Below the pieces are notes generated by a model. That model did no database searches. It was not told the origin of the DNA and saw only the letters and a program-made list of their open reading frames with translations. Position numbers and translations under genes: made by a program. A DNA stretch of 64,000 bases, taken from the IMG/VR virus record IMGVR_UViG_3300032322_002561, positions 172,310 to 236,309 of that record. The stretch is one strand, 5' to 3'. Shown one piece after another: positions 30,850-54,325 of the stretch. The first letter of the stretch is position 1. Each line of letters begins with the position of its first letter.

Positions 30850-31431
30850 TTATTTTTTACTTAGATCACTGACGTAATCACAGATGCCCAGTTCCAGGGC
30901 TTCATTGGCATTCAGCCAAACGTCATGTGGTGGTAGCAGTTTTTCACGTATGGTGGCATGGTCAAGCCCGGTGGTAGTGGCATAGTGTCTGATCATGCGT
31001 TCCTGAGCAAGTCCAAATTCTTTGGTGATCGCCCATAATTCATGATGTTTGCCTTCACTGCCCCAAGAATACTGATGACTCAATATGCTGGTATCGGGAG
31101 TGAGCACACGACGTCCAGGAGTCCCGGTCAAAAAGATCAGCAAACCACAGCTGGCTATCTGCCCCAAGCCCACGGTCTTGATTGGGATGGCACTGGATTT
31201 CATGACATCAATTAGTGCAAAAGCACTTTCCATGCTGCCGCCCTCGCTACAGATCATGAGCAAGAGCTCTTTTTTCTTCTTTTTGTTGACGTGATTTTCC
31301 ACCAAGATCCACTCGATCACAGGCTTGATGGTTTCGGGAGAAACATCATCCATAAACACATACATGCCAGCTTCTTGAAGCAATTTTGAAGGATCTTTTT
31401 CGGTAAGATCGGGTTCTGGTGCAGTTGCCAT
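30850..31431 (-). CDS. Second, divergent ClpP-like protease
   Basis: ICSEGG, GQIASCG (Ser), LSHQ (His), DVWL.A.EALELG.CD (Asp). Confidence 0.88.
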   Translation of the reverse strand: MATAPEPDLTEKDPSKLLQEAGMYVFMDDVSPETIKPVIEWILVENHVNKKKKKELLLMICSEGGSMESAFALIDVMKSSAIPIKTVGLGQIASCGLLIFLTGTPGRRVLTPDTSILSHQYSWGSEGKHHELWAITKEFGLAQERMIRHYATTTGLDHATIREKLLPPHDVWLNANEALELGICDYVSDLSKK

Positions 31432-33358: not shown

Positions 33359-33386
33359 AAAGAAAGGAACCAAATTGGTTCCCTTC
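33357..33386 (-). terminator. Intrinsic terminator
   Basis: GGAACCAATTTGGTTCC stem plus TTTCTTTTT. Confidence 0.65.
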
Positions 33387-33407: not shown

Positions 33408-33674
33408 TTAGGCAGCTACTTTGGTGGCCTTTTCGATGTTTTTGGTGATTTCTTTTTGTGCTTCTTTGGCCACAGCTTCTACAGTTTCCGCAAACTCTTT
33501 GACAGCCTTGTTGGTTGTACGGATCAAGCTGAACTGTGCATCTACCACGGTATGAGCACTTTTGCGAACATGCTCGGGCATGTAGGTGATCAAGGTTGTG
33601 GCACCTTTGTGCATGTTGTCAATGGCAACAGTTACATCAAACAATTTTGCAAAATCAATTTTTTGAAATTCCAT
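33408..33674 (-). CDS. Amphipathic helical protein (phasin-like?), preceded by ROSE-like leader
   Basis: All-helical A/K/E-rich 88 aa; strong SD. Confidence 0.7.
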   Translation of the reverse strand: MEFQKIDFAKLFDVTVAIDNMHKGATTLITYMPEHVRKSAHTVVDAQFSLIRTTNKAVKEFAETVEAVAKEAQKEITKNIEKATKVAA

Positions 33675-33734
33675 GTTAATTCTCCTTAGAAATTAAGCGA
33701 GTTTTAGCGAAGTCCCAAACCATTTGGCAACTTC
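33675..33734 (-). promoter_or_regulatory. ROSE-like RNA thermometer leader (copy 1)
   Basis: GAAGU-UG-CCAAA/UUUGG-G-ACUUC stem, then CUCGCUUA...UAAGGAG hairpin with bulged G over the SD. Confidence 0.65.
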
Positions 33735-33807: not shown

Positions 33808-33832
33808 TAAAAACCCCCAAAATTTGGGGGTA
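33808..33832 (-). terminator. Intrinsic terminator
   Basis: ACCCCCAAATTTTGGGGGT stem plus T-run. Confidence 0.65.
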
Positions 33833-33858: not shown

Positions 33859-34008
33859 TTACTTCTTCTCAGCTGGTTTTGCAGCAGGTGCAGCTGGAGC
33901 AGCTGGTTTAGCGGCTTCTTTCTTTGGTTCTTCTTTCTTTGCTGGAGCTGTTTGAGCGGCTACAGATAACGCGAATGCGGATGCTACGATTGCTAGTAAT
34001 GCTTTCAT
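33859..34008 (-). CDS. Small exported Ala/Lys/Pro-rich protein (49 aa, not in ORF track)
   Basis: MKALLAIVASAFALSVAA signal plus QTAPAKKEEPKKEAAKPAAPAAPAAKPAEKK; AAGGA SD. Confidence 0.8.
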   Translation of the reverse strand: MKALLAIVASAFALSVAAQTAPAKKEEPKKEAAKPAAPAAPAAKPAEKK

Positions 34009-34096: not shown

Positions 34097-34807
34097 CTAA
34101 TTTTGTTGACGCAGTTTTGCCAAACCCAGAATCTGCAGAATTCGTATGTACATCCACCCAATATCAAATTCCCACCAACGTTGGCTGAATTTGGCACTGG
34201 CTCCGTCAGCATGGTGACCGTTGTGTAGTTCTTCGCCGCCGATCCAAATGGCTATGGGCCATAGATTACGGCTGGTATCTTTGGTGTCGACGTTACGGTA
34301 GCCCCACCAGTGGCTGAGTCCGTTTATGACACCGGCCGCCCAGAACGGAATCCAGATCATCTGCACACCCCAGACCAACAAGCCCCAGGGACCAAACACA
34401 GCCAGGTCAATAATGAACATGATCATAATGCCTAGTCGGCTGTGCCGGGCATACAAATTGCGCTCGATCCAGTCGTCGGGGGTGCCTGTGCTTAGATCTT
34501 TGACCATGCCACGATCCCGGCTGGCCTTGTGATATAGAAATGCACCACCAAACAGCACACGCCAAATACCGTAGATTTGAGGACTGTGCGGGTCTCCTGG
34601 TTGGTCACTCTTTTGGTGATGTCGGCGGTGTATGGCCACCCATTCACGAGTGATCATGCCAGTGGTGAGCCACAACCAAAAACGCATGAAGTGAACTACC
34701 ATAGGATGAAACTGCACAGCTCTGTGAGCTTGGCTTCTGTGCAGATACAGCGTCACACAGGCTATGGTAATTTGGACCATTACCAAGGTCGCGATGATTG
34801 CGGACAT
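34097..34807 (-). CDS. desA: Delta-9 type fatty-acid desaturase
   Basis: His boxes HRSQAH, HRRHH, HNGHH; DPHSP; GGEELHN; WWEFDIGW. Confidence 0.93.
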   Translation of the reverse strand: MSAIIATLVMVQITIACVTLYLHRSQAHRAVQFHPMVVHFMRFWLWLTTGMITREWVAIHRRHHQKSDQPGDPHSPQIYGIWRVLFGGAFLYHKASRDRGMVKDLSTGTPDDWIERNLYARHSRLGIMIMFIIDLAVFGPWGLLVWGVQMIWIPFWAAGVINGLSHWWGYRNVDTKDTSRNLWPIAIWIGGEELHNGHHADGASAKFSQRWWEFDIGWMYIRILQILGLAKLRQQN

Positions 34808-34824
34808 GTTTATATTTAGCTGTT

Positions 34825-35382
34825 TTAAACGCAGCTTTCCTGGAAAGGAAAAAACGTACGGTTCAAAAATAGGGTAAAAATGCGTTTGCTCACATCCGCG
34901 GTTTCTTGTTGCAGACTGTACCAACTGGATGGTGCCAATCGTGCCACCACATCGATGTCGCCATCACGATGGATCATTTGCAAATCGTGTTTTTCAGCCA
35001 AGTGCGCCATGGTGGTGTTCCATTTCACACAATGCAGATACAACTGTTTGTAGCCACGATTTCTAGCCCAGGTGATACCTTCTTTTAGTAGATCACTGCC
35101 AAGGCCAAAGTTGCGATATTCCTCATACACACTGAGACCAAACTCTATGCTAAGGCTGTTGATCTGGGCAATGTGCAACACTCCTAACCATCCGGTACAG
35201 TTGTAACTGACTAGAAATGTGTGCTGAGTGGGATCATTTTGGATGCGTGCTACTAGATCATCAATATAATCATCTGAAACAACAATACCAAAATACATTC
35301 TACGATCTTCAGCACTGAGGCCCTTGAGCCAGTGCCCAAATTTTGGGTATTCTTCAGTGTTGAGAAATCGTGTGCTGATCAT
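34825..35382 (-). CDS. GNAT-family acetyltransferase
   Basis: EFGLSV...YR..GLGS.L......A..RG...L...C...N..M..LA.K. Confidence 0.85.
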   Translation of the reverse strand: MISTRFLNTEEYPKFGHWLKGLSAEDRRMYFGIVVSDDYIDDLVARIQNDPTQHTFLVSYNCTGWLGVLHIAQINSLSIEFGLSVYEEYRNFGLGSDLLKEGITWARNRGYKQLYLHCVKWNTTMAHLAEKHDLQMIHRDGDIDVVARLAPSSWYSLQQETADVSKRIFTLFLNRTFFPFQESCV

Positions 35383-49271: not shown

Positions 49272-50063
49272 ATGAAACTGGCGTTTGACTTAATTTCTGA
49301 TCTACATCTTGAAACATGGCCCACAGCCTTTGATTGGCAAGGTCTTGCAACCAGTCCTTTTTGCATTGTAGCCGGAGACGTATCACGTGATCGCAACATC
49401 CTAATAGAAACCCTGCGGCATCTTGGCACCTGTTATCAGGCTGTGTTTTACATAGATGGCAATGATGAGCACCGGCATTATTATGATGATCTAGCCTCCA
49501 GCTACAAGGATCTTGAAAAGCAGTTGCAGAATATTCCACATGTTACCTATCTACAAGGCAATGTTGTGGTAATTGATGGTGTAGCAATTTTGGGTACCAA
49601 TGGCTGGTGGGGATTTGATTTTGACAAAAACATTGATCCCACACAGTGCGCTTTATGGTATCAAGAAAAAGTTGCCTGTGCCGGACACACTGTGCGCAGT
49701 ATTGGCAACATGGCCACAACAGATGCTATATATCTTACCAACAGTGTGACCAAACTACAGGCTCACCTGGATGTGCAACAAATAATTGTGGTCACTCACA
49801 CAGTGCCTAGCCCCGAATTGGTGTCACATGACATTGATCTAGTAGGCGACTATCGGTTCAATTGTATAGGTAACGAAGGAATGTTGCAGGCCTTGCAGGC
49901 AGACTTTGGCAACAAAATCCATACTTGGTGTTTTGGACACTATCATGGCAGTGTGGATCAAGTCAAACACGGTGTAAGATTTGTCAACAACTGTCGGGGT
50001 CGACACGACACAAAATGGTGCAAACATGTATTCCACCCCTTGCGTATTGAAGTAGAAATTTAG
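49272..50063 (+). CDS. Calcineurin-like metallophosphoesterase
   Basis: SDLH.E, VAGD, GNDEH, THTVP, FGHYH, NN.RG. Confidence 0.88.
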   Translation: MKLAFDLISDLHLETWPTAFDWQGLATSPFCIVAGDVSRDRNILIETLRHLGTCYQAVFYIDGNDEHRHYYDDLASSYKDLEKQLQNIPHVTYLQGNVVVIDGVAILGTNGWWGFDFDKNIDPTQCALWYQEKVACAGHTVRSIGNMATTDAIYLTNSVTKLQAHLDVQQIIVVTHTVPSPELVSHDIDLVGDYRFNCIGNEGMLQALQADFGNKIHTWCFGHYHGSVDQVKHGVRFVNNCRGRHDTKWCKHVFHPLRIEVEI

Positions 50064-50371
50064 AGTACGTCTTCGGGTTCCAGTTTGACCTGCAACGGAT
50101 AACTTTGAGCTCGCGCACTCACAGTGACTTCGATGCCTTTTTGTTCAGCTATTTCATACGGCAACACAGCCACAATGGCACTGCCTTCTTGATGTATATC
50201 AATGGTGATACGTTCGGCACTTTCAGCAGTGTAATCAAAATGTTCTATCAAACTTTCTATCACAAATTCCATGCTGGTTTGATTGTCATTGAGATATATT
50301 ACACGAAACAGGGGCGGTTCTTTGATTTTTTCTACAGGTTTAATTCTTGTACGTGGTTCTGCATTTGCCAT
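50060..50371 (-). CDS. clpS: Clp protease adaptor ClpS
   Basis: P.LF.V..LND..T.MEFV..L...F, IH..G.A.V, EIAE.K, YPL...E. Confidence 0.93.
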   Translation of the reverse strand: MANAEPRTRIKPVEKIKEPPLFRVIYLNDNQTSMEFVIESLIEHFDYTAESAERITIDIHQEGSAIVAVLPYEIAEQKGIEVTVSARAQSYPLQVKLEPEDVL

Positions 50372-50386: not shown

Positions 50387-50411
50387 CAGTAGCGGGACAG
50401 TCCCGCTACTG
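50387..50411. terminator. Stem-loop between hsp20 and clpS
   Basis: CAGTAGCGGGACAGTCCCGCTACTG perfect inverted repeat. Confidence 0.55.
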
Positions 50412-50425
50412 TATTTACTATTTTA

Positions 50426-50863
50426 TTAGTCTTGATAGGTAATTGCAATACTCTTTGGCTTGGCACTGTCAGGAATCTTGCGTTCTAGATACACGGTCAA
50501 GATACCATCCTTTTGTCCAGCACTGTTTACTTCCACATATTCTCCTAGACTAAAGGTACGAATGAACTTTCTTGCACTGATGCCCTGATGTCTATAAATG
50601 TAGTCAGGATTCACAGGTTCATTTTTTTCACCTGTAATGATCAGTTCGCCCTCTTTTACCGTGATATCAATTTCGCCTTGACCAAAGCCGGCCACGGCTA
50701 GTTGTATCTCGTAAAGATTTTCCATGGTTTCTACAATATTGTAGGGTGGATAGTTTACATTTGATGCATGGTCAAGTTGGTTTACAATGCGATCAAACAA
50801 TCTATCTACACCAATGGCATTGCGATAAAATGGTGTCAAATCATAACTTGTAATCTTAGTCAT
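50426..50863 (-). CDS. Small heat-shock protein Hsp20 (IbpA-like)
   Basis: IG.DR.F, NYPPYNI, LAVAGF, H.GIS.R.F.R.F.L, DGIL.V.L. Confidence 0.95.
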   Translation of the reverse strand: MTKITSYDLTPFYRNAIGVDRLFDRIVNQLDHASNVNYPPYNIVETMENLYEIQLAVAGFGQGEIDITVKEGELIITGEKNEPVNPDYIYRHQGISARKFIRTFSLGEYVEVNSAGQKDGILTVYLERKIPDSAKPKSIAITYQD

Positions 50864-50918
50864 TTGTTTTCTCCTTATTAAGCAAGTTGACTATTGGCGG
50901 CCCCAAACGGGCACCGCC
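50864..50918 (-). promoter_or_regulatory. ROSE-like RNA thermometer leader (copy 2, hsp20)
   Basis: GGCGG-UG-CCC/GGG-G-CCGCC stem, then CUUGCUUAAUAAGGAG. Confidence 0.75.
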
Positions 50919-50930
50919 TACTGAGTTTCC

Positions 50931-52811
50931 TCAGTCTTTCTTTTCGGTAAAGTCTGCATCGACCACAGTGTCTTCTGGCTTGGATTCTGCTGTGGTTTTC
51001 TTAGACTTTGCTTCAAAGATGGGTTGGCTGACTGCCATGACTTCGTTTATCTTACCGGTCATGGCTTCACGATCTGCGCCTTTGGCTACTTCTTCTAGTT
51101 CGTTCAAGGCTCGTTCAATAGATTCAATTTGGTCAGCGGTGAGTTCAGTTCGTACTTCGGCTAGATCTTGCCGAATCATGTGCAGTGTGCTGTCAGCATT
51201 GTTGCGTGCCTGAATTAGATCGCGTTGACGTCGATCCTCTTCGGCATTGGCTTCTGCGTCCTTGATCATGCGTTGAATTTCTTCATCAGTGAGTCCACTA
51301 TTGGCCTTGATGGTGATTTTGTTTTCTTTGCCAGTGGCTTTGTCCTTGGCTGAAACATGCATGATACCATTGGCGTCGATGTCTAAGGTCACTTCAATTT
51401 GTGGTGTGCCACGACGTGCTGGTGCTATACCTTCAAGATTGAATTCACCCAAGAGCTTGTTGTGCTGACACAATTCACGCTCGCCTTGAAATACCTTGAT
51501 GGTCACAGCAGGCTGATTGTCTTCTGCGGTACTAAAAATTTGGCTGTGTTTGGTTGGAATAGTTGTATTTTTTTGAATCAGTTTGGCCATTACGCCGCCC
51601 ATGGTTTCAATCCCAAGACTGAGTGGTGTAACATCCAACAATAATACGTCTTTTCTGTCACCAGCCAGCACTGCACCTTGAATTGCAGCACCCACTGCCA
51701 CGGCTTCGTCAGGATTTACATCCTTGCGTGGTGTTTTACCAAACAGTTGCTCAACTGCCTCTTGTACCTTTGGCATGCGTGTTTGTCCACCGACAAGGAT
51801 GACTTCGTCAATATCGCTAGCGCCAACACCGGCATCTTTCATGGCTTGACGACAAGGAGCCAAACTGCGTTGAATTAGTTCTTCAACTAAGCTTTCTAAT
51901 TTTGCACGTGTGAGTTTGACATTTAAGTGCTTGGGTCCTGAGGCATCGGCAGTGATGTATGGTAGGTTTACATCAGTCTGGTTGCTGTTAGAAAGTTCAA
52001 TCTTGGCTTTTTCTGCGGCATCTTTTAGACGTTGTAAGGCAAGCATGTCTTTTTTGAGATCAACACCGCTTTCTTTCTTGAATTCATCTACCAAATAATC
52101 CATAATGCGTTGGTCAAAGTCTTCACCGCCTAGGAACGTGTCACCATTTGTTGACAATACTTCAATTTGTTTTTCACCGTCAATGTTGGCAATTTCAATG
52201 ATGCTGACGTCAAATGTACCACCCCCCAGGTCATACACAGCTACCTTGCGATCGGTTTTATCTTGTTTGTCAACACCATAGGCCAAGGCAGCTGCCGTGG
52301 GTTCGTTGATGATGCGTAGCACTTCCAAGCCTGCGATGCGTCCGGCATCCTTGGTGGCCTGACGCTGGCTGTCATTGAAGTAGGCCGGTACTGTGATCAC
52401 TGCTTGTGTGACTTCTTGGCCTAGATAGTCTTCGGCAGTTTTTTTCATTTTGCGAAGAACTTCGGCACTGATTTGTGGAGGTGCCAATTCTTGATTTTGA
52501 GCTCGGATCCAGGCATCACCGTTTGAAGCCTTGATGATTTCATAAGGCATGAGGTCTATGTCTTTTTGCACAGCTTCCTCTTCAAACTTGCGCCCGATCA
52601 GTCGCTTGGCAGCGTAGATTGTGTTTTTTGGATTGGTTACTGCTTGTCGTTTGGCACTGGCACCAACCATGATTTCATCGTCGGTATAGGCGATGATAGA
52701 GGGTGTGGTTCTAGCACCTTCGCTGTTTTCTATTACTCGGGGATTTCCGTTTTCAATAATGGCCACACACGAATTTGTGGTGCCCAGGTCAATACCTATG
52801 ACTTTGCTCAT
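50931..52811 (-). CDS. dnaK: Chaperone DnaK (Hsp70)
   Basis: [37 protein letters not shown]; full length. Confidence 0.98.
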
Positions 52812-52870
52812 TTGCGTTCTCCTTATGTTAAGCAAGATTTTTTTGTAGCCCGACCATCGGCACTACAAAA
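52812..52870 (-). promoter_or_regulatory. ROSE-like RNA thermometer leader (copy 3, dnaK)
   Basis: UUUUGUAG-UG-CCGA/UCGG-G-CUACAAAA stem, then CUUGCUUAACAUAAGGAG. Confidence 0.7.
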
Positions 52871-52872
52871 CT

Positions 52873-52903
52873 TATTTATACAACAATTTTTCTACTGTGT
52901 CAA
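52873..52903 (-). promoter_or_regulatory. Composite promoter for dnaK
   Basis: TTGACA-N17-TATAAA whose -10 is also an exact T4 late box TATAAATA. Confidence 0.65.
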
Positions 52904-52905
52904 AT

Positions 52906-53133
52906 CTAATATAATTTTTTGGGCAATTGCTGGCTGGCCAATTGTTTTTGCCAACGTTTAGAAGCAGCATTGCGTTTGAGTTTGCGTCTAGTAGTGGGTT
53001 TGATATAGCACTCACGATCTCGCAAGTCATTGAGGATTCCTGAAGCCTGTATCTTCTTTTTAAATTTGCGCAGGGCTTTTTCGACATTGCCGTCGTTTAC
53101 CAGCACACTGCGTCCGCGAAAATAATTACTCAT
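52906..53133 (-). CDS. rpsU: Ribosomal protein bS21
   Basis: V....VEKALRKFKKK....G...DLR.RE.Y.KPT..RK. Confidence 0.93.
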   Translation of the reverse strand: MSNYFRGRSVLVNDGNVEKALRKFKKKIQASGILNDLRDRECYIKPTTRRKLKRNAASKRWQKQLASQQLPKKLY

Positions 53134-54325
53134 TGACTTTTTTCAGTTCCTTGGGAGTATTTACCATGCTTTCATCAATAACCACACAGTTTATTTTATT
53201 GCGCTGATACTCGGGCAAGCGGTACATGTGAGGTAAAAGCACACGTTCAAGTTCACTGTGCAAGCCACGAGCACCGGTTCGATTCTGTATGGTATTTGTG
53301 GCTATGAGTTCTAGAGCTTGATCAGTAAACTGCAATTCCACATGGTCCTGATCAAACAACCACTTGTATTGTGCCACATAACTGTGTTTGATATCAATAA
53401 GTATCTTCACCAGGTCCTGCTTGGTAAGTGCATCAAGAGCTACCCAAGTAGGAAATCTACCAACAAATTCTGGTATCAAGCCAAACTTGATCAAATCATC
53501 TGGAGTAGTTTGATTAACGCTGGTGGCCTGCGCTGTTACATCCGCAGAAAATCCTATACTGGTGCCTTGAATTCGATTTTTAACAATATTGTCAAGACCC
53601 ACAAAGGCGCCGCCGGCAATGAACAAAATGTTAGTGGTATCAATTTCTACAGTTTCCCCACTGGGGTGTTTTCTACCGCCTTGTGGTACTATTCTACACC
53701 GAGTACCCTCAACTAATTTTAGCAAGGCTTGTTGCACACCCTCACCCGATACGTCGCGTGTGATGCTGGCACTTTCACTGCGCCGGCTAATTTTGTCAAT
53801 CTCATCTATGAACACAATGCCTCGTTCACAGCGTTTTACATCATAATCTGCTGCGGCATACAACCGACTTATCAAACTTTCTACATCATCGCCCACATAC
53901 CCTGCTTCGGTTAGACTAGTGGCATCGGCTATTACAAAAGGCACATCCAAATATCGTGCCACGCTGCGTGCCAATAAAGTTTTGCCTGATCCCGTGGGTC
54001 CAAGCATGAGAATATTTACTTTTTCAATTTCGTTGTTTTTTTCTTGACTGTTTATGCGCTTGTAGTGATTTGTTATAGCCACACTAAGCACAATCTTGGC
54101 TGCGTCCTGACCGATCACGTACTGATCCAAGTGTGCCTTTATAGCCGCGGGATCAGCCAAGGGTGCCATGGGTGATATGTCTTTGTCTTCTTGCCTGAGC
54201 AAGTTTTCACAAAGATCTACACATTCGTTGCAGATGCTTACGGCATCACCAACAATCAGTTTGGCCACTGCATCTTTGTGTTTGTTACAGAAACTGCAAG
54301 TGGTTATTGGTGTTTCTTTGCTCAT
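53126..54325 (-). CDS. clpX: ATP-dependent Clp protease ATPase ClpX
   Basis: CSFC...ICNECV zinc finger, GPTGSGKT, DEIDK, RDVSGEGVQQALLK, GGRKHP, IGF loop, TGARGL. Confidence 0.97.
   Translation of the reverse strand: MSKETPITTCSFCNKHKDAVAKLIVGDAVSICNECVDLCENLLRQEDKDISPMAPLADPAAIKAHLDQYVIGQDAAKIVLSVAITNHYKRINSQEKNNEIEKVNILMLGPTGSGKTLLARSVARYLDVPFVIADATSLTEAGYVGDDVESLISRLYAAADYDVKRCERGIVFIDEIDKISRRSESASITRDVSGEGVQQALLKLVEGTRCRIVPQGGRKHPSGETVEIDTTNILFIAGGAFVGLDNIVKNRIQGTSIGFSADVTAQATSVNQTTPDDLIKFGLIPEFVGRFPTWVALDALTKQDLVKILIDIKHSYVAQYKWLFDQDHVELQFTDQALELIATNTIQNRTGARGLHSELERVLLPHMYRLPEYQRNKINCVVIDESMVNTPKELKKVNE

What the first reader, a model, noticed from the sequence alone, without database searches (positions are those of the whole stretch)
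50864..52870. Covarying ROSE-like RNA thermometers on phage dnaK and hsp20
Seen: the leaders of hsp20 (50864-50918), dnaK (52812-52870) and an unknown gene (33675-33734) share one architecture. Each has a hairpin with different but fully compensatory stems around an identical UG/G internal loop, followed by CUYGCUUA...UAAGGAG that pairs over the SD with a bulged G. Known: U(U/C)GCU paired to the SD with a bulged G is the hallmark of ROSE thermometers on alpha/gamma-proteobacterial small-HSP mRNAs. Inference: the phage runs its own temperature-gated translational regulon. A ROSE-like element on dnaK is atypical, and the conserved UG/G loop may be an extra protein-binding site.
Basis: partly seen in the sequence, partly recalled or inferred. 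Interest (0 to 1): 0.75.

Follow-up and report, generated by a model that had tools for sequence, protein, structure and literature searches.

The report
Phage ROSE-like thermometers on chaperone genes
A large lake-water phage puts the same short two-hairpin RNA leader, of the ROSE heat-sensor type known from bacterial small heat-shock genes, in front of its own dnaK, hsp20 and a small unknown gene, and the same leader turns out to be widespread on chaperone genes of many other phages.

Summary
Three minus-strand leaders (hsp20, dnaK, an 88-aa ORF) share hairpin I (variable stem, a Y·G pair, a bulged G, a C-G pair) followed by CUYGCUU pairing over AAGGAG with a bulged G. They are the only three copies in the 236-kb phage record.

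A covariance model built only from other phages' copies finds exactly these three (52.6, 47.9 and 33.1 bits; next best 12.5). Rfam ROSE_3 matches two of them end to end but below its cut-off. One related phage copy passes the cut-off.

The element is a large phage-borne family:
- 87 model hits in IMG/VR loci, with strong covariation in hairpin I and a nearly invariant hairpin II.
- In an unselected sample of 78 contigs, 65 copies precede DnaK, Hsp20 or GroES genes and 12 precede small helical proteins of 80-91 aa.
- It also precedes hsp20 in cultured phages (Melnitz, HTVC103P, Phosso, Atu_ph07).
- It is absent from the 80 nearest bacterial dnaK loci.

Most likely it is a ROSE-like gate that masks the Shine-Dalgarno (SD) site and limits chaperone translation. 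Temperature dependence itself is untested, and energy-model predictions are mixed.

The 'UG/G loop' is already part of the ROSE_3 consensus. The phage Hsp20 keeps the IbpA residues needed for binding its own leader, so feedback by the protein is a live alternative.

The parts
52875..52903 (-). sigma-70-like promoter of dnaK: TTGACA (52903-52898), 17-nt spacer, TATAAA (52880-52875). The predicted transcript start falls at or within a few bases of the foot of hairpin I.
   Evidence: Read directly. The consensus scan missed it because the -10 hexamer ends in A. The start site is inferred, not mapped.
52841..52870 (-). dnaK leader hairpin I: 9-bp outer stem ending in a U·G pair, bulged G at 52861, 4-bp inner stem CCGA/UCGG, 3-nt loop.
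   Evidence: Fold; parse; model R1 hit 52806-52867 at 52.6 bits, E 1.6e-10.
52819..52836 (-). dnaK leader hairpin II: anti-SD CUUGCUUA (bulged G at 52833) paired with UAAGGAG (SD 52824-52819).
   Evidence: Predicted dG at 37 C is -1.4 kcal/mol and the hairpin opens at about 47 C. P(SD unpaired) rises from 0.17 at 20 C to 0.63 at 42 C.
50931..52811 (-). dnaK coding sequence (626 aa, ATG at 52811).
   Evidence: Pfam HSP70, E 1.8e-260. 76-81% identical to DnaK on other viral contigs and 67-76% (78% over one partial match) to bacterial DnaK, the closest being Burkholderiales.
50921..50934 (-). Small hairpin CUGAG-GAAA-CUCAG overlapping the dnaK stop codon (TGA 50933-50931), just upstream of the hsp20 leader.
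   Evidence: Its role is unknown.
50896..50918 (-). hsp20 leader hairpin I: GGCGGU, bulged G at 50912, CCC, loop GUUU, GGG, GCCGCC.
   Evidence: R1 hit 50858-50918 at 47.9 bits. Rfam ROSE_3 33.6 bits over model positions 1-69.
50871..50886 (-). hsp20 leader hairpin II: CUUGCUU (bulged G at 50883), loop AAU, AAGGAG (SD 50876-50871).
   Evidence: In the energy model this is the weakest of the three: dG at 37 C is about 0 and it opens at about 37 C.
50426..50863 (-). hsp20 coding sequence (145 aa), IbpA-like.
   Evidence: Pfam HSP20, E 2.4e-15. 38% identical over its full length to Pseudomonas citronellolis IbpA. Keeps the equivalents of E. coli IbpA Arg93 (R98) and Tyr34 (Y38).
33709..33734 (-). 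orf88 leader hairpin I: GAAGUU, bulged G at 33728, CCAAA, loop UGG, UUUGG, GACUUC.
   Evidence: R1 hit 33669-33734 at 33.1 bits. ROSE_3 26.5 bits.
33682..33701 (-). orf88 leader hairpin II: CUCGCUUA (bulged G at 33698), loop AUUUC, UAAGGAG. Its third pair is C-G where the other two copies have U·G.
   Evidence: dG at 37 C is -4.2 kcal/mol, equal to the Pseudomonas citronellolis ibpA hairpin II.
33408..33674 (-). orf88: conserved 88-aa helical protein of unknown function, found only in viral and metagenomic sequence.
   Evidence: 198 homologous clusters, the 120 listed at 75-94% identity, with no Pfam family. Atlas clusters are all viral. AF2 gives pLDDT 82 and a helical hairpin with no significant fold match. 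Orthologues on 40-339 kb contigs keep the leader (33.6-37 bits).
33362..33386 (-). Terminator-like hairpin after orf88. Together with the terminator-like site at 33813-33831 upstream, it frames orf88 as a single-gene transcription unit.
   Evidence: 8 terminator-like sites in this stretch against 0.9 expected.

Best explanation
The three leaders belong to a phage-borne lineage of short, two-hairpin ROSE-like translational control elements. The closest described relative is Rfam ROSE_3, the short ROSE-like thermometer type of Pseudomonas ibpA.

Shown:
- The conserved architecture.
- Its restriction to the phage's chaperone-type genes.
- Selection on the hairpin I structure.
- A nearly invariant anti-SD segment complementary to the SD.

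Inferred, by analogy with tested ROSE elements:
- At low temperature the weak hairpin II (6-7 pairs, mostly A-U and G·U, interrupted by a bulged G) holds the Shine-Dalgarno (SD) sequence AAGGAG against the anti-SD CUYGCUU and limits 30S binding.
- Warming, or any other destabilisation, melts hairpin II and frees the SD. DnaK, the IbpA-like Hsp20 and orf88 are then made when folding stress is high.
- Hairpin I is stable and does not sense temperature. It sits at or near the 5' end of the dnaK transcript and probably stabilises the mRNA or helps hairpin II fold.
- Transcription of dnaK comes from an ordinary sigma-70-type promoter, so the stress input would be purely translational.
For: 1. Only three copies exist in 236 kb, far above chance.
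2. Model R1 was built from 10 copies of other phages, with no window sequence in it. It finds exactly these three at 52.6, 47.9 and 33.1 bits; the next hit scores 12.5 bits.
3. Rfam ROSE_3 aligns over its full length to two window copies, to the Melnitz phage copy (34.1 bits) and to L082:6860-6926 above its gathering score (44.4 vs 43).
4. Covariation on 84 distinct copies:
   - 97.8% of cells are paired.
   - 8 of 9 hairpin I pairs show changes on both sides.
   - 193 compensatory cells against 50.7 in shuffles (0 of 500 shuffles reach this).
   - Slid controls give 47-66% paired.
5. Hairpin II is 100% paired. The anti-SD C, U, Y, bulged purine, C, U, U is nearly invariant, and the bulge is G in 73 copies and A in 11.
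6. Gene association:
   - In loci chosen by protein: 57 Hsp20, 53 DnaK, 4 GroES and 5 rubredoxin genes.
   - In an unselected 18-mer sample: DnaK 21, Hsp20 35, GroES 9, small helical proteins 12, unclear 1, out of 78.
   - Two complete relatives of 383 and 364 kb have exactly 2 copies each.
7. Tested ROSE-like elements have the same defining features, and hairpin II alone confers thermoregulation (PMC3669281).
8. Hairpin II is predicted to be marginally stable. Across 78 copies the median opening temperature is 44 C (interquartile range 43-47). The dnaK leader shows the largest predicted rise in SD accessibility from 20 to 42 C among 177 gene starts in the genome.
Against: - No experiment or transcript data exist. 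Only DNA metagenomes from lake water hold the sequence.
- Nearest-neighbour predictions do not single out hsp20 or orf88. At 20 C, P(SD unpaired) is 0.46 and 0.36, ranking 102 and 82 of 177. For orf88 the predicted trend with temperature is reversed.
- Hairpin II pairs never vary on both sides, so its pairing is supported by complementarity and conservation only, not by covariation.
- All three window copies are below Rfam's ROSE_3 cut-off, and the dnaK copy gives no ROSE_3 hit at all.
- These phages come from cool lakes and oceans, where classical heat shock is rare. Temperature may therefore not be the physiological signal.
- The sequence conservation in hairpin I (Y·G pair, purine bulge, C-G pair) goes beyond what a mere stabilising stem needs.
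Confidence: 0.6

Rival explanations
1. Protein-mediated feedback (an aggregation sensor) is the main control. The phage's IbpA-like Hsp20 binds the shared leader (hairpin I and/or II) and represses translation of hsp20, dnaK and orf88. When unfolded or aggregating proteins titrate Hsp20 away, all three are derepressed. Temperature would act only indirectly. This can coexist with thermosensing.
For: - E. coli, Cedecea and Vibrio IbpA repress their own translation by binding the ibpA 5' UTR thermometer. This needs Arg93 and an aromatic residue at position 34, and E. coli IbpA also controls rpoH translation (PMC10474464; PMC10410725, listed).
- In alignment A6, Arg93 and Tyr34 are conserved in the window Hsp20 (R98, Y38) and in all 7 phage Hsp20s aligned. 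E. coli IbpB, which lacks the activity, has Gln and Phe there.
- Hairpin I carries sequence-specific conservation (Y·G pair, purine bulge, invariant C-G) shared by all target genes.
- The phages live in cool water, where a stress sensor makes more sense than a heat sensor.
Against: - No binding data exist for any phage Hsp20.
- Arg93 is general to alpha- and gamma-proteobacterial IbpAs, so its presence may simply reflect ancestry.
- The Lys98 equivalent is not conserved.
- The RNA determinants of IbpA binding are not defined in the papers read.
- Some copies (L008, L010) lack hairpin I yet keep hairpin II.
Confidence: 0.22
2. The element is a constitutive expression module with no sensing role. 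Hairpin I is a 5' stabiliser, and a weak SD hairpin merely sets a fixed translation rate for abundant chaperone mRNAs. It may have been carried along when an ibpA-type gene was captured.
For: - Hairpin I begins at the predicted 5' end of the dnaK transcript. 5' stem-loops are discussed as mRNA stabilisers for Pseudomonas ibpA.
- Predicted SD occlusion is modest for hsp20 and orf88.
Against: - A passive passenger would not keep the anti-SD nearly invariant and hairpin I compensated across phages whose Hsp20 proteins are only about 40% identical.
- It would not have spread to dnaK, groES, rubredoxin and small-protein genes.
- It would not be limited to 2-3 genes per 236-383 kb genome.
- The bulged purine that weakens the helix is conserved, which argues for tuned lability.
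Confidence: 0.13
3. It is a DNA-level signal (promoter, operator or recombination site) or a chance resemblance, not an RNA element.
For: - A TA(T/A)AAT hexamer lies within 45 nt upstream in 27 of 78 copies.
- CTTGCTT loosely resembles the sigma-32 -35 box (my own recollection).
Against: - The element always sits on the coding strand, at a fixed 5-9 nt from the start codon, and includes the SD.
- Compensatory changes preserve RNA pairing, including G·U.
- A -35 box placed about 25 nt before the ATG leaves no room for a -10 box and a leader.
- TATAAATA is not enriched in this genome: 7 found against 15 expected.
- Chance is excluded.
Confidence: 0.03

Closest known systems
Short ROSE-like RNA thermometers of Pseudomonas ibpA (Krajewski et al. 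2013, PMC3669281). That Rfam ROSE_3 (RF02523) was built from these is my own recollection, not a tool result.
   Same: - Two hairpins: a stable, conserved hairpin I and a short hairpin II.
- In hairpin II, U(U/C)GCU pairs imperfectly with the SD and carries a bulged G; the AUG lies outside the hairpin.
- The ROSE_3 consensus hairpin I (GAUGCCG...CGGGUC) holds the same Y·G pair, bulged G and C-G pair.
- The downstream sHSP is IbpA-like.
- Full-length ROSE_3 alignments are obtained, and one phage copy is above the cut-off.
   Different: - The elements are carried by phages, not bacteria.
- They also control dnaK, groES, a rubredoxin gene and small unknown proteins.
- The top of hairpin II is U-A where Pseudomonas has the G-C 'clamp' (CUUGCUUA against CUUGCUGA), so the helix is as weak or weaker.
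- Some copies have A at the bulge.
- Some dnaK leaders carry a third, middle hairpin.
- Most copies score below the ROSE_3 gathering score.
- dnaK has a sigma-70-type rather than a sigma-32 promoter.
Classical ROSE (Rfam RF00435, rhizobial hsp genes) and ROSE_2 (RF01832, enterobacterial ibpA)
   Same: SD masking by U(U/C)GCU with a bulged G in the hairpin nearest the start codon, upstream of small heat-shock genes.
   Different: - These elements have 3-4 hairpins and are longer.
- The window leaders give no hit to them at E<=10, whereas the E. coli ibpA leader scores 100 bits against ROSE_2 in the same tool.
IbpA self-repression through its own 5' UTR (E. coli and other gamma-proteobacteria; PMC10474464, PMC10410725)
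   Same: An IbpA-type sHSP is encoded behind a ROSE-type leader, and the Arg93 and Tyr34 equivalents are conserved in the phage protein.
   Different: RNA binding by the phage protein is untested. Here the putative targets would include dnaK and orf88 rather than rpoH.
Other phage-associated RNA thermometers: lambda cIII (my own knowledge) and the fourU element of blyA in prophage SPbeta (PMC10586365, listed)
   Same: Temperature-responsive translation signals carried on phage genomes.
   Different: They have unrelated structures and unrelated target genes (lysis-lysogeny and autolysin genes, not chaperones), and they are single cases rather than a conserved multi-gene family.

Membership tests
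ROSE-like RNA thermometers (functional class) | Lies in the 5' untranslated leader directly upstream of a heat-shock or chaperone gene | tested here: met
   The leaders end 7 nt before the AUGs of Hsp20 (Pfam HSP20) and DnaK (Pfam HSP70). The third target, orf88, has no known function.
ROSE-like RNA thermometers (functional class) | Two to four hairpins, with the SD inside the hairpin nearest the start codon | tested here: met
   Two hairpins are predicted in all three leaders. The consensus structure is kept in 84 distinct copies, with 97.8% of cells paired.
ROSE-like RNA thermometers (functional class) | Conserved U(U/C)GCU anti-SD paired imperfectly with the SD | tested here: met
   The anti-SD is CUUGCUU in two leaders and CUCGCUU in one, paired with AAGGAG. 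These columns are nearly invariant in the family. Pairing rests on complementarity only, because the pairs do not covary.
ROSE-like RNA thermometers (functional class) | Bulged G opposite the SD that weakens the helix | tested here: met
   G at 50883, 52833 and 33698. Across the family the bulge is G in 73 copies and A in 11.
ROSE-like RNA thermometers (functional class) | Temperature-dependent melting of hairpin II and temperature-dependent translation | not testable with these tools
   Only energy-model estimates are available. dnaK goes from 0.17 to 0.63 P(SD unpaired) between 20 and 42 C, hsp20 from 0.46 to 0.64, and orf88 from 0.36 to 0.15. A Pseudomonas ibpA reference goes from 0.18 to 0.32. 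Inconclusive.
Rfam ROSE_3 (RF02523) | Score at or above the curated gathering score (43 bits) | tested here: not met
   Window copies: hsp20 33.6 bits, orf88 26.5 bits, dnaK no hit at E<=10. A relative, L082:6860-6926, passes at 44.4 bits, and Melnitz-3 scores 34.1 bits. The phage lineage therefore straddles the family boundary.
Rfam ROSE_3 (RF02523) | Hairpin I with the conserved core: Y·G pair, bulged G, GCC...GGG | tested here: met
   The ROSE_3 consensus ugCGgGAUGCCG..CGGGUCcCGca aligns with hairpin I of the hsp20 and orf88 leaders. The motif is found in 78 of 88 non-redundant phage copies.
IbpA-type self-regulating sHSP (RNA-binding IbpA) | Arg93 (irreplaceable) and an aromatic residue at position 34, E. 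coli numbering | tested here: met
   In alignment A6 with E. coli IbpA and IbpB, the window Hsp20 has R98 and Y38 at these columns. All 7 phage Hsp20s aligned (window copy included) keep both, while IbpB has Q and F. The requirement is taken from PMC10474464.
IbpA-type self-regulating sHSP (RNA-binding IbpA) | Binds its own leader and represses its translation | not testable with these tools
   This needs filter-binding or PURE-system assays. The complex-prediction tool gives no verdict for protein-RNA pairs, so it was not used.

The most novel reading that the evidence does not exclude
Large phages carry a self-contained proteostasis regulon that does not depend on sigma-32. The phage's IbpA-like Hsp20 binds the shared leader, with the conserved motif of Y·G pair, purine bulge and C-G pair in hairpin I as its handle. 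It thereby represses translation of hsp20, dnaK, groES and a set of small helical proteins (orf88 and its analogues). Aggregating proteins during infection, or heat, titrate Hsp20 away and melt hairpin II. The virus would then sense folding stress in the infected cell by itself and answer with its own chaperones. The small 80-91 aa proteins would be new stress proteins or co-chaperones.
Probability: 0.22. Interest if true: 0.8.

Novelty: new variant of a known kind. Interest (0 to 1): 0.66.

Why it matters
ROSE elements are textbook bacterial RNA thermometers, described on small heat-shock genes of alpha- and gamma-proteobacteria. Here the same device is a conserved feature of phage genomes.

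- It was found on at least 120 IMG/VR contigs for one exact sequence variant alone.
- It occurs in cultured phages of OM43 (Methylophilales), SAR11 (Pelagibacter), Sinorhizobium and Agrobacterium.
- It has been extended to dnaK, groES and unknown small proteins.

This implies that phages regulate their auxiliary chaperone genes after transcription, in response to stress in the infected cell, instead of simply expressing them. It also gives a sequence handle (model R1) for finding phage stress regulons in metagenomes. It flags orf88-like proteins as candidate stress proteins. Finally, it supplies dozens of natural variants of a minimal thermometer tuned for cool-water hosts, which could be useful for RNA-thermometer biophysics and as low-temperature genetic switches.

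I found no paper describing this in the searchable library. The Melnitz phage paper mentions hsp20 once and thermometers not at all.

Tried and rejected
- **Rfam at gathering thresholds:** no hit on the whole window.
- **The genome search with RF02523 on the own genome:** no match, although cmscan on short stretches gives 33.6 and 26.5 bits. I attribute this to the tool's first-look filter, not to absence.
- **MAFFT alignments A1 and A2:** they misaligned the SD region. I therefore used a same-geometry seed of 10 non-window copies (A3) with a hand-written structure.
- **Thermodynamic screening:** it did not single out hsp20 or orf88 among 177 crude gene starts. It is kept as a caveat, not as evidence.
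- **T4-like late promoter TATAAATA:** it occurs before many relatives' leaders, but it is not enriched in this genome (7 against 15 expected) and lies within 45 nt in only 27 of 78 copies.
- **Host origin:**
  - No element next to the 80 nearest bacterial dnaK genes.
  - No true hit in 5 named genomes or in 121 sampled Burkholderiales genomes. The four weak hits are not SD hairpins and do not precede chaperone genes. The filters may miss weak copies.
  - The Pseudomonas citronellolis ibpA leader was recovered at 22 bits, which serves as a positive reference.
- **Function of orf88:** Pfam, PHROGs, Atlas, AF2 plus Foldseek (AFDB clusters and PDB) gave nothing significant. A Phasin_2 lead at score 0.83 is too weak to use.
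- **Homology of orf88 to the other small ROSE-controlled proteins (MFTADAF... family):** not shown; hhalign probability 1.8%.
- **RNA-seq evidence:** only DNA runs from lake water hold the sequence.
- **blastn of Pseudomonas ibpA against E. coli genomes:** no match. E. coli ibpA and ibpB were fetched by coordinates instead.
- **Weak Rfam 'freshwater-2' hits (16-21 bits):** they reflect only the shared AAGGAGAAAACAAAUG tail.
- **Cyanophage S-RIM4 hsp20:** no convincing copy (15.8 bits).
Full report
**What is there**

The window is the last 64 kb of a 236,309-bp IMG/VR virus record: GC 45%, linear, CheckV completeness 68%. It has tail-fibre and other phage genes. Near-identical DNA occurs only in lake-water metagenomes.

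All three leaders lie on the minus strand. Each has two parts:
- **Hairpin I.** An outer stem of 6-9 pairs differs in sequence between copies. It ends in a U·G pair, followed by one bulged G, an inner stem starting with C-G, and a 3-4 nt loop.
- **Hairpin II.** After a 4-9 nt spacer, CUUGCUU or CUCGCUU pairs with AAGGAG around a bulged G. The AUG follows 7 nt after the SD.

Exact coordinates are in the parts list. The longest ORF's TTG at 52835 lies inside the leader.

**Is it more than chance?**

GCTTA-N(1-12)-TAAGGAG occurs 3 times in the window against 0.02 expected. It occurs 3 times in the whole record, even with relaxed or A-bulge patterns.

I built covariance model R1 from ten copies taken from other viral contigs, with no window sequence in the seed. 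Scanning the whole record with R1 returns the dnaK leader (52.6 bits, E 1.6e-10), the hsp20 leader (47.9 bits) and the orf88 leader (33.1 bits). The next hit scores 12.5 bits.

**Relation to ROSE**

At gathering thresholds Rfam reports nothing. Searched sensitively, ROSE_3 (RF02523, cut-off 43 bits) gives these results:

| Leader | ROSE_3 score |
|---|---|
| window hsp20 | 33.6 bits, E 7.8e-6, full length |
| window orf88 | 26.5 bits, E 5e-4, full length |
| window dnaK | no hit at E<=10 |
| relative L082:6860-6926 | 44.4 bits (above cut-off) |
| Melnitz-3 hsp20 | 34.1 bits |

The same tool scores the E. coli ibpA leader at 100 bits against ROSE_2, which serves as a positive control.

The ROSE_3 consensus hairpin I already contains GAUGCCG...CGGGUC. 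Krajewski et al. (PMC3669281) describe these features of the class:
- two hairpins;
- U(U/C)GCU paired imperfectly with the SD in hairpin II;
- hairpin II alone sufficient for thermoregulation;
- hairpin II melting between 25 and 42 C;
- hairpin I highly conserved, insensitive to temperature and of unclear role, possibly mRNA stabilisation.

**A large phage family**

The same leader appeared in front of genes on many related contigs. These were fetched as relatives of the Hsp20 (L001-L016) and of the DnaK (L017-L096, 76-81% identity).
- 119 pattern matches were found, of which 85 differ by more than 15%.
- R1 gives 87 hits at E<=1e-3.
- On the resulting alignment of 84 distinct rows, 97.8% of cells are paired. 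Eight of nine hairpin I pairs change on both sides. There are 193 compensatory cells against 50.7 in shuffles (0 of 500 shuffles reach this). Sliding the partners drops pairing to 47-66%.
- The alignment was fitted to the model, which favours the structure. An alignment-free parse finds the same motif with a perfect outer stem of at least 4 pairs in 78 of 88 copies.
- The pair next to the bulge is U·G in 55 copies and C-G in 20. This shows it is a pair, not an internal loop.
- Hairpin II is 100% paired but essentially invariant; only U·G alternates with C-G at one pair. Its support is therefore conservation plus complementarity, not covariation.
- The bulge is G or A in both hairpins: G 67 and A 8 in hairpin I, G 73 and A 11 in hairpin II.

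**Which genes carry it**

| Sample | Hsp20 | DnaK | GroES | Rubredoxin | Small helical proteins | Unclear |
|---|---|---|---|---|---|---|
| Protein-selected loci | 57 | 53 | 4 | 5 | - | - |
| 78 contigs with the exact 18-mer CTTGCTTAATTAAGGAGA | 35 | 21 | 9 | - | 12 | 1 |

- The 18-mer sample is unselected for gene content.
- The 12 small proteins have 80-91 aa and fall into two families. Hairpin I is recognisable in 67 of the 78 copies.
- Two complete relatives of 383 and 364 kb have exactly two copies each.
- In this phage the J-domain gene, clpX, clpS and clpP lack the element.
- orf88 orthologues on 40-339 kb contigs keep the leader with different, compensated hairpin I stems (33.6-37 bits).

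**Cultured phages**

Cultured phages also carry it before hsp20:

| Phage | R1 score (bits) |
|---|---|
| Methylophilales phage Melnitz-3 | 44.8 |
| Pelagibacter phage HTVC103P | 35.8 |
| Sinorhizobium phage Phosso | 29.0 |
| Agrobacterium phage Atu_ph07 | 23.3 |
| Phage C48C1 | 22.5 |

A cyanophage (S-RIM4) did not give a convincing copy.

**Not simply copied from the presumed host**

The nearest bacterial DnaKs are mostly from Burkholderiales (67-76% identity over the full-length matches).
- None of these 80 loci has the element.
- None of 121 sampled Burkholderiales genomes gave a true hit. The search filters may miss weak copies.
- R1 does recover the Pseudomonas citronellolis ibpA leader (22 bits). 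Its hairpin II reads CUUGCUGA...UCAGGAG, so the phage version replaces the upper G-C 'clamp' by U-A.

**How it probably works**

*Shown:* the architecture, its selective conservation, and its restriction to chaperone-type genes.

*Inferred from tested ROSE elements:* hairpin II masks the SD in the cold and melts on warming.

Energy-model numbers agree in part:

| Leader | Hairpin II dG at 37 C (kcal/mol) | Opens at (C) | P(SD unpaired), 20 to 42 C |
|---|---|---|---|
| hsp20 | 0 | 37 | 0.46 to 0.64 |
| dnaK | -1.4 | 47 | 0.17 to 0.63 |
| orf88 | -4.2 | 68 | 0.36 to 0.15 |
| Pseudomonas ibpA reference | -4.2 | not reached up to 80 C | 0.18 to 0.32 |

- Across 78 copies the median opening temperature is 44 C.
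- The dnaK rise is the largest among 177 gene starts in the genome.
- hsp20 and orf88 are not outliers. The model does not capture the non-canonical geometry of the bulged-G helix.
- dnaK has a sigma-70-type promoter (TTGACA, 17 nt, TATAAA) placed so that hairpin I starts the transcript. hsp20 has no recognisable promoter of its own and probably rides on the dnaK transcript.

**A second reading that the data do not exclude**

The window Hsp20 is IbpA-like: 38% identical to Pseudomonas IbpA. E. coli, Cedecea and Vibrio IbpA bind their own thermometer-type leader and repress translation. This needs Arg93 and an aromatic residue at position 34 (PMC10474464).

Both residues are conserved in the window protein (R98, Y38) and in every phage Hsp20 aligned. 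IbpB, which lacks the activity, has Gln and Phe.

A shared leader on dnaK, hsp20 and orf88 could therefore also be a shared Hsp20 binding site. That would make the regulon a sensor of aggregation rather than, or as well as, a sensor of temperature. This fits phages from cool lakes and oceans. It is inference only.

**Verdict**

- The ROSE-like reading is right in kind. The elements form a distinct phage-borne branch next to ROSE_3 that mostly falls below Rfam's threshold.
- Putting dnaK, groES and small unknown proteins under such control is new as far as the searchable literature shows.
- Temperature dependence remains to be tested. Several cultured phage-host pairs now offer a way to do so.

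Noticed in passing
window 30850-31431 (-), 50060-50371 (-), 53126-54325 (-); genome C1:147954-148130 (-): The phage carries a broad proteostasis set besides dnaK and hsp20: ClpP (Pfam E 2.3e-27), ClpS, ClpX and, outside the window, a J-domain protein. None of these has the ROSE-like leader. No Cpn10 was found in the record.
   Followed up: partly
L212:2534-2803, L226:8116-8388, L215:3364-3606 and similar loci: In other phages the same leader precedes two further families of small (80-91 aa) helical proteins, starting MFTADAF... and MVNAKDFQFDT... They resemble orf88 in size and N-terminal pattern. Homology to orf88 is not demonstrated (hhalign probability 1.8%) and they have no Pfam family.
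   Followed up: partly
L018:2935-3009, L040:2925-3006, L047:2026-2101 and other dnaK leaders: Many dnaK leaders of related phages have a three-hairpin version, with an extra GGGCA...UGCCC hairpin between hairpin I and the SD hairpin (spacer 19-28 nt). The Pseudomonas citronellolis ibpA leader also has a middle hairpin.
   Followed up: no
L008:726-869, L009, L010, L012, L013: A 47-48 aa rubredoxin gene (Pfam PF00301, at its cut-off) sits behind a full two-hairpin leader directly upstream of hsp20. The hsp20 gene that follows keeps only hairpin II.
   Followed up: partly
window 33859-34008 (-), terminator-like hairpin 33813-33831: A 49-aa ORF with a signal-peptide-like N-terminus and an Ala/Pro/Lys-rich tail lies just upstream of orf88 and is followed by a strong terminator-like hairpin. 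Downstream of orf88 lie two ORFs of 232 and 360 aa whose N-termini look like a lipoprotein and a secreted protein, with no Pfam match.
   Followed up: no
window 34097-35382 (-) and L185-L190: The gene order GNAT acetyltransferase, fatty-acid desaturase, orf88, two unknown genes, ClpP is largely conserved on 155-339 kb contigs of related phages.
   Followed up: partly
window 50387-50411: A perfect 11-bp palindromic hairpin (CAGTAGCGGGAC/GTCCCGCTACTG) lies between hsp20 and clpS. It was flagged as terminator-like on the plus strand only. It may end the dnaK-hsp20 transcript or be a processing site.
   Followed up: no
whole record G000: the genome search with Rfam family RF02523 reports no match in the record, although cmscan on 121-131 nt stretches gives 33.6 and 26.5 bits. 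Negative results from the genome-wide first-look filter should be read with care.
   Followed up: yes
L199 (G097:C64:12317-12367): A Burkholderiales genome has a lone hairpin with the same motif (Y·G pair, bulged G, C-G pair: CACGGUGCUUGGAUAAGGCCGUG) upstream of a membrane-protein gene, without an SD hairpin. This may be chance, or the hairpin I motif may occur on its own.
   Followed up: no
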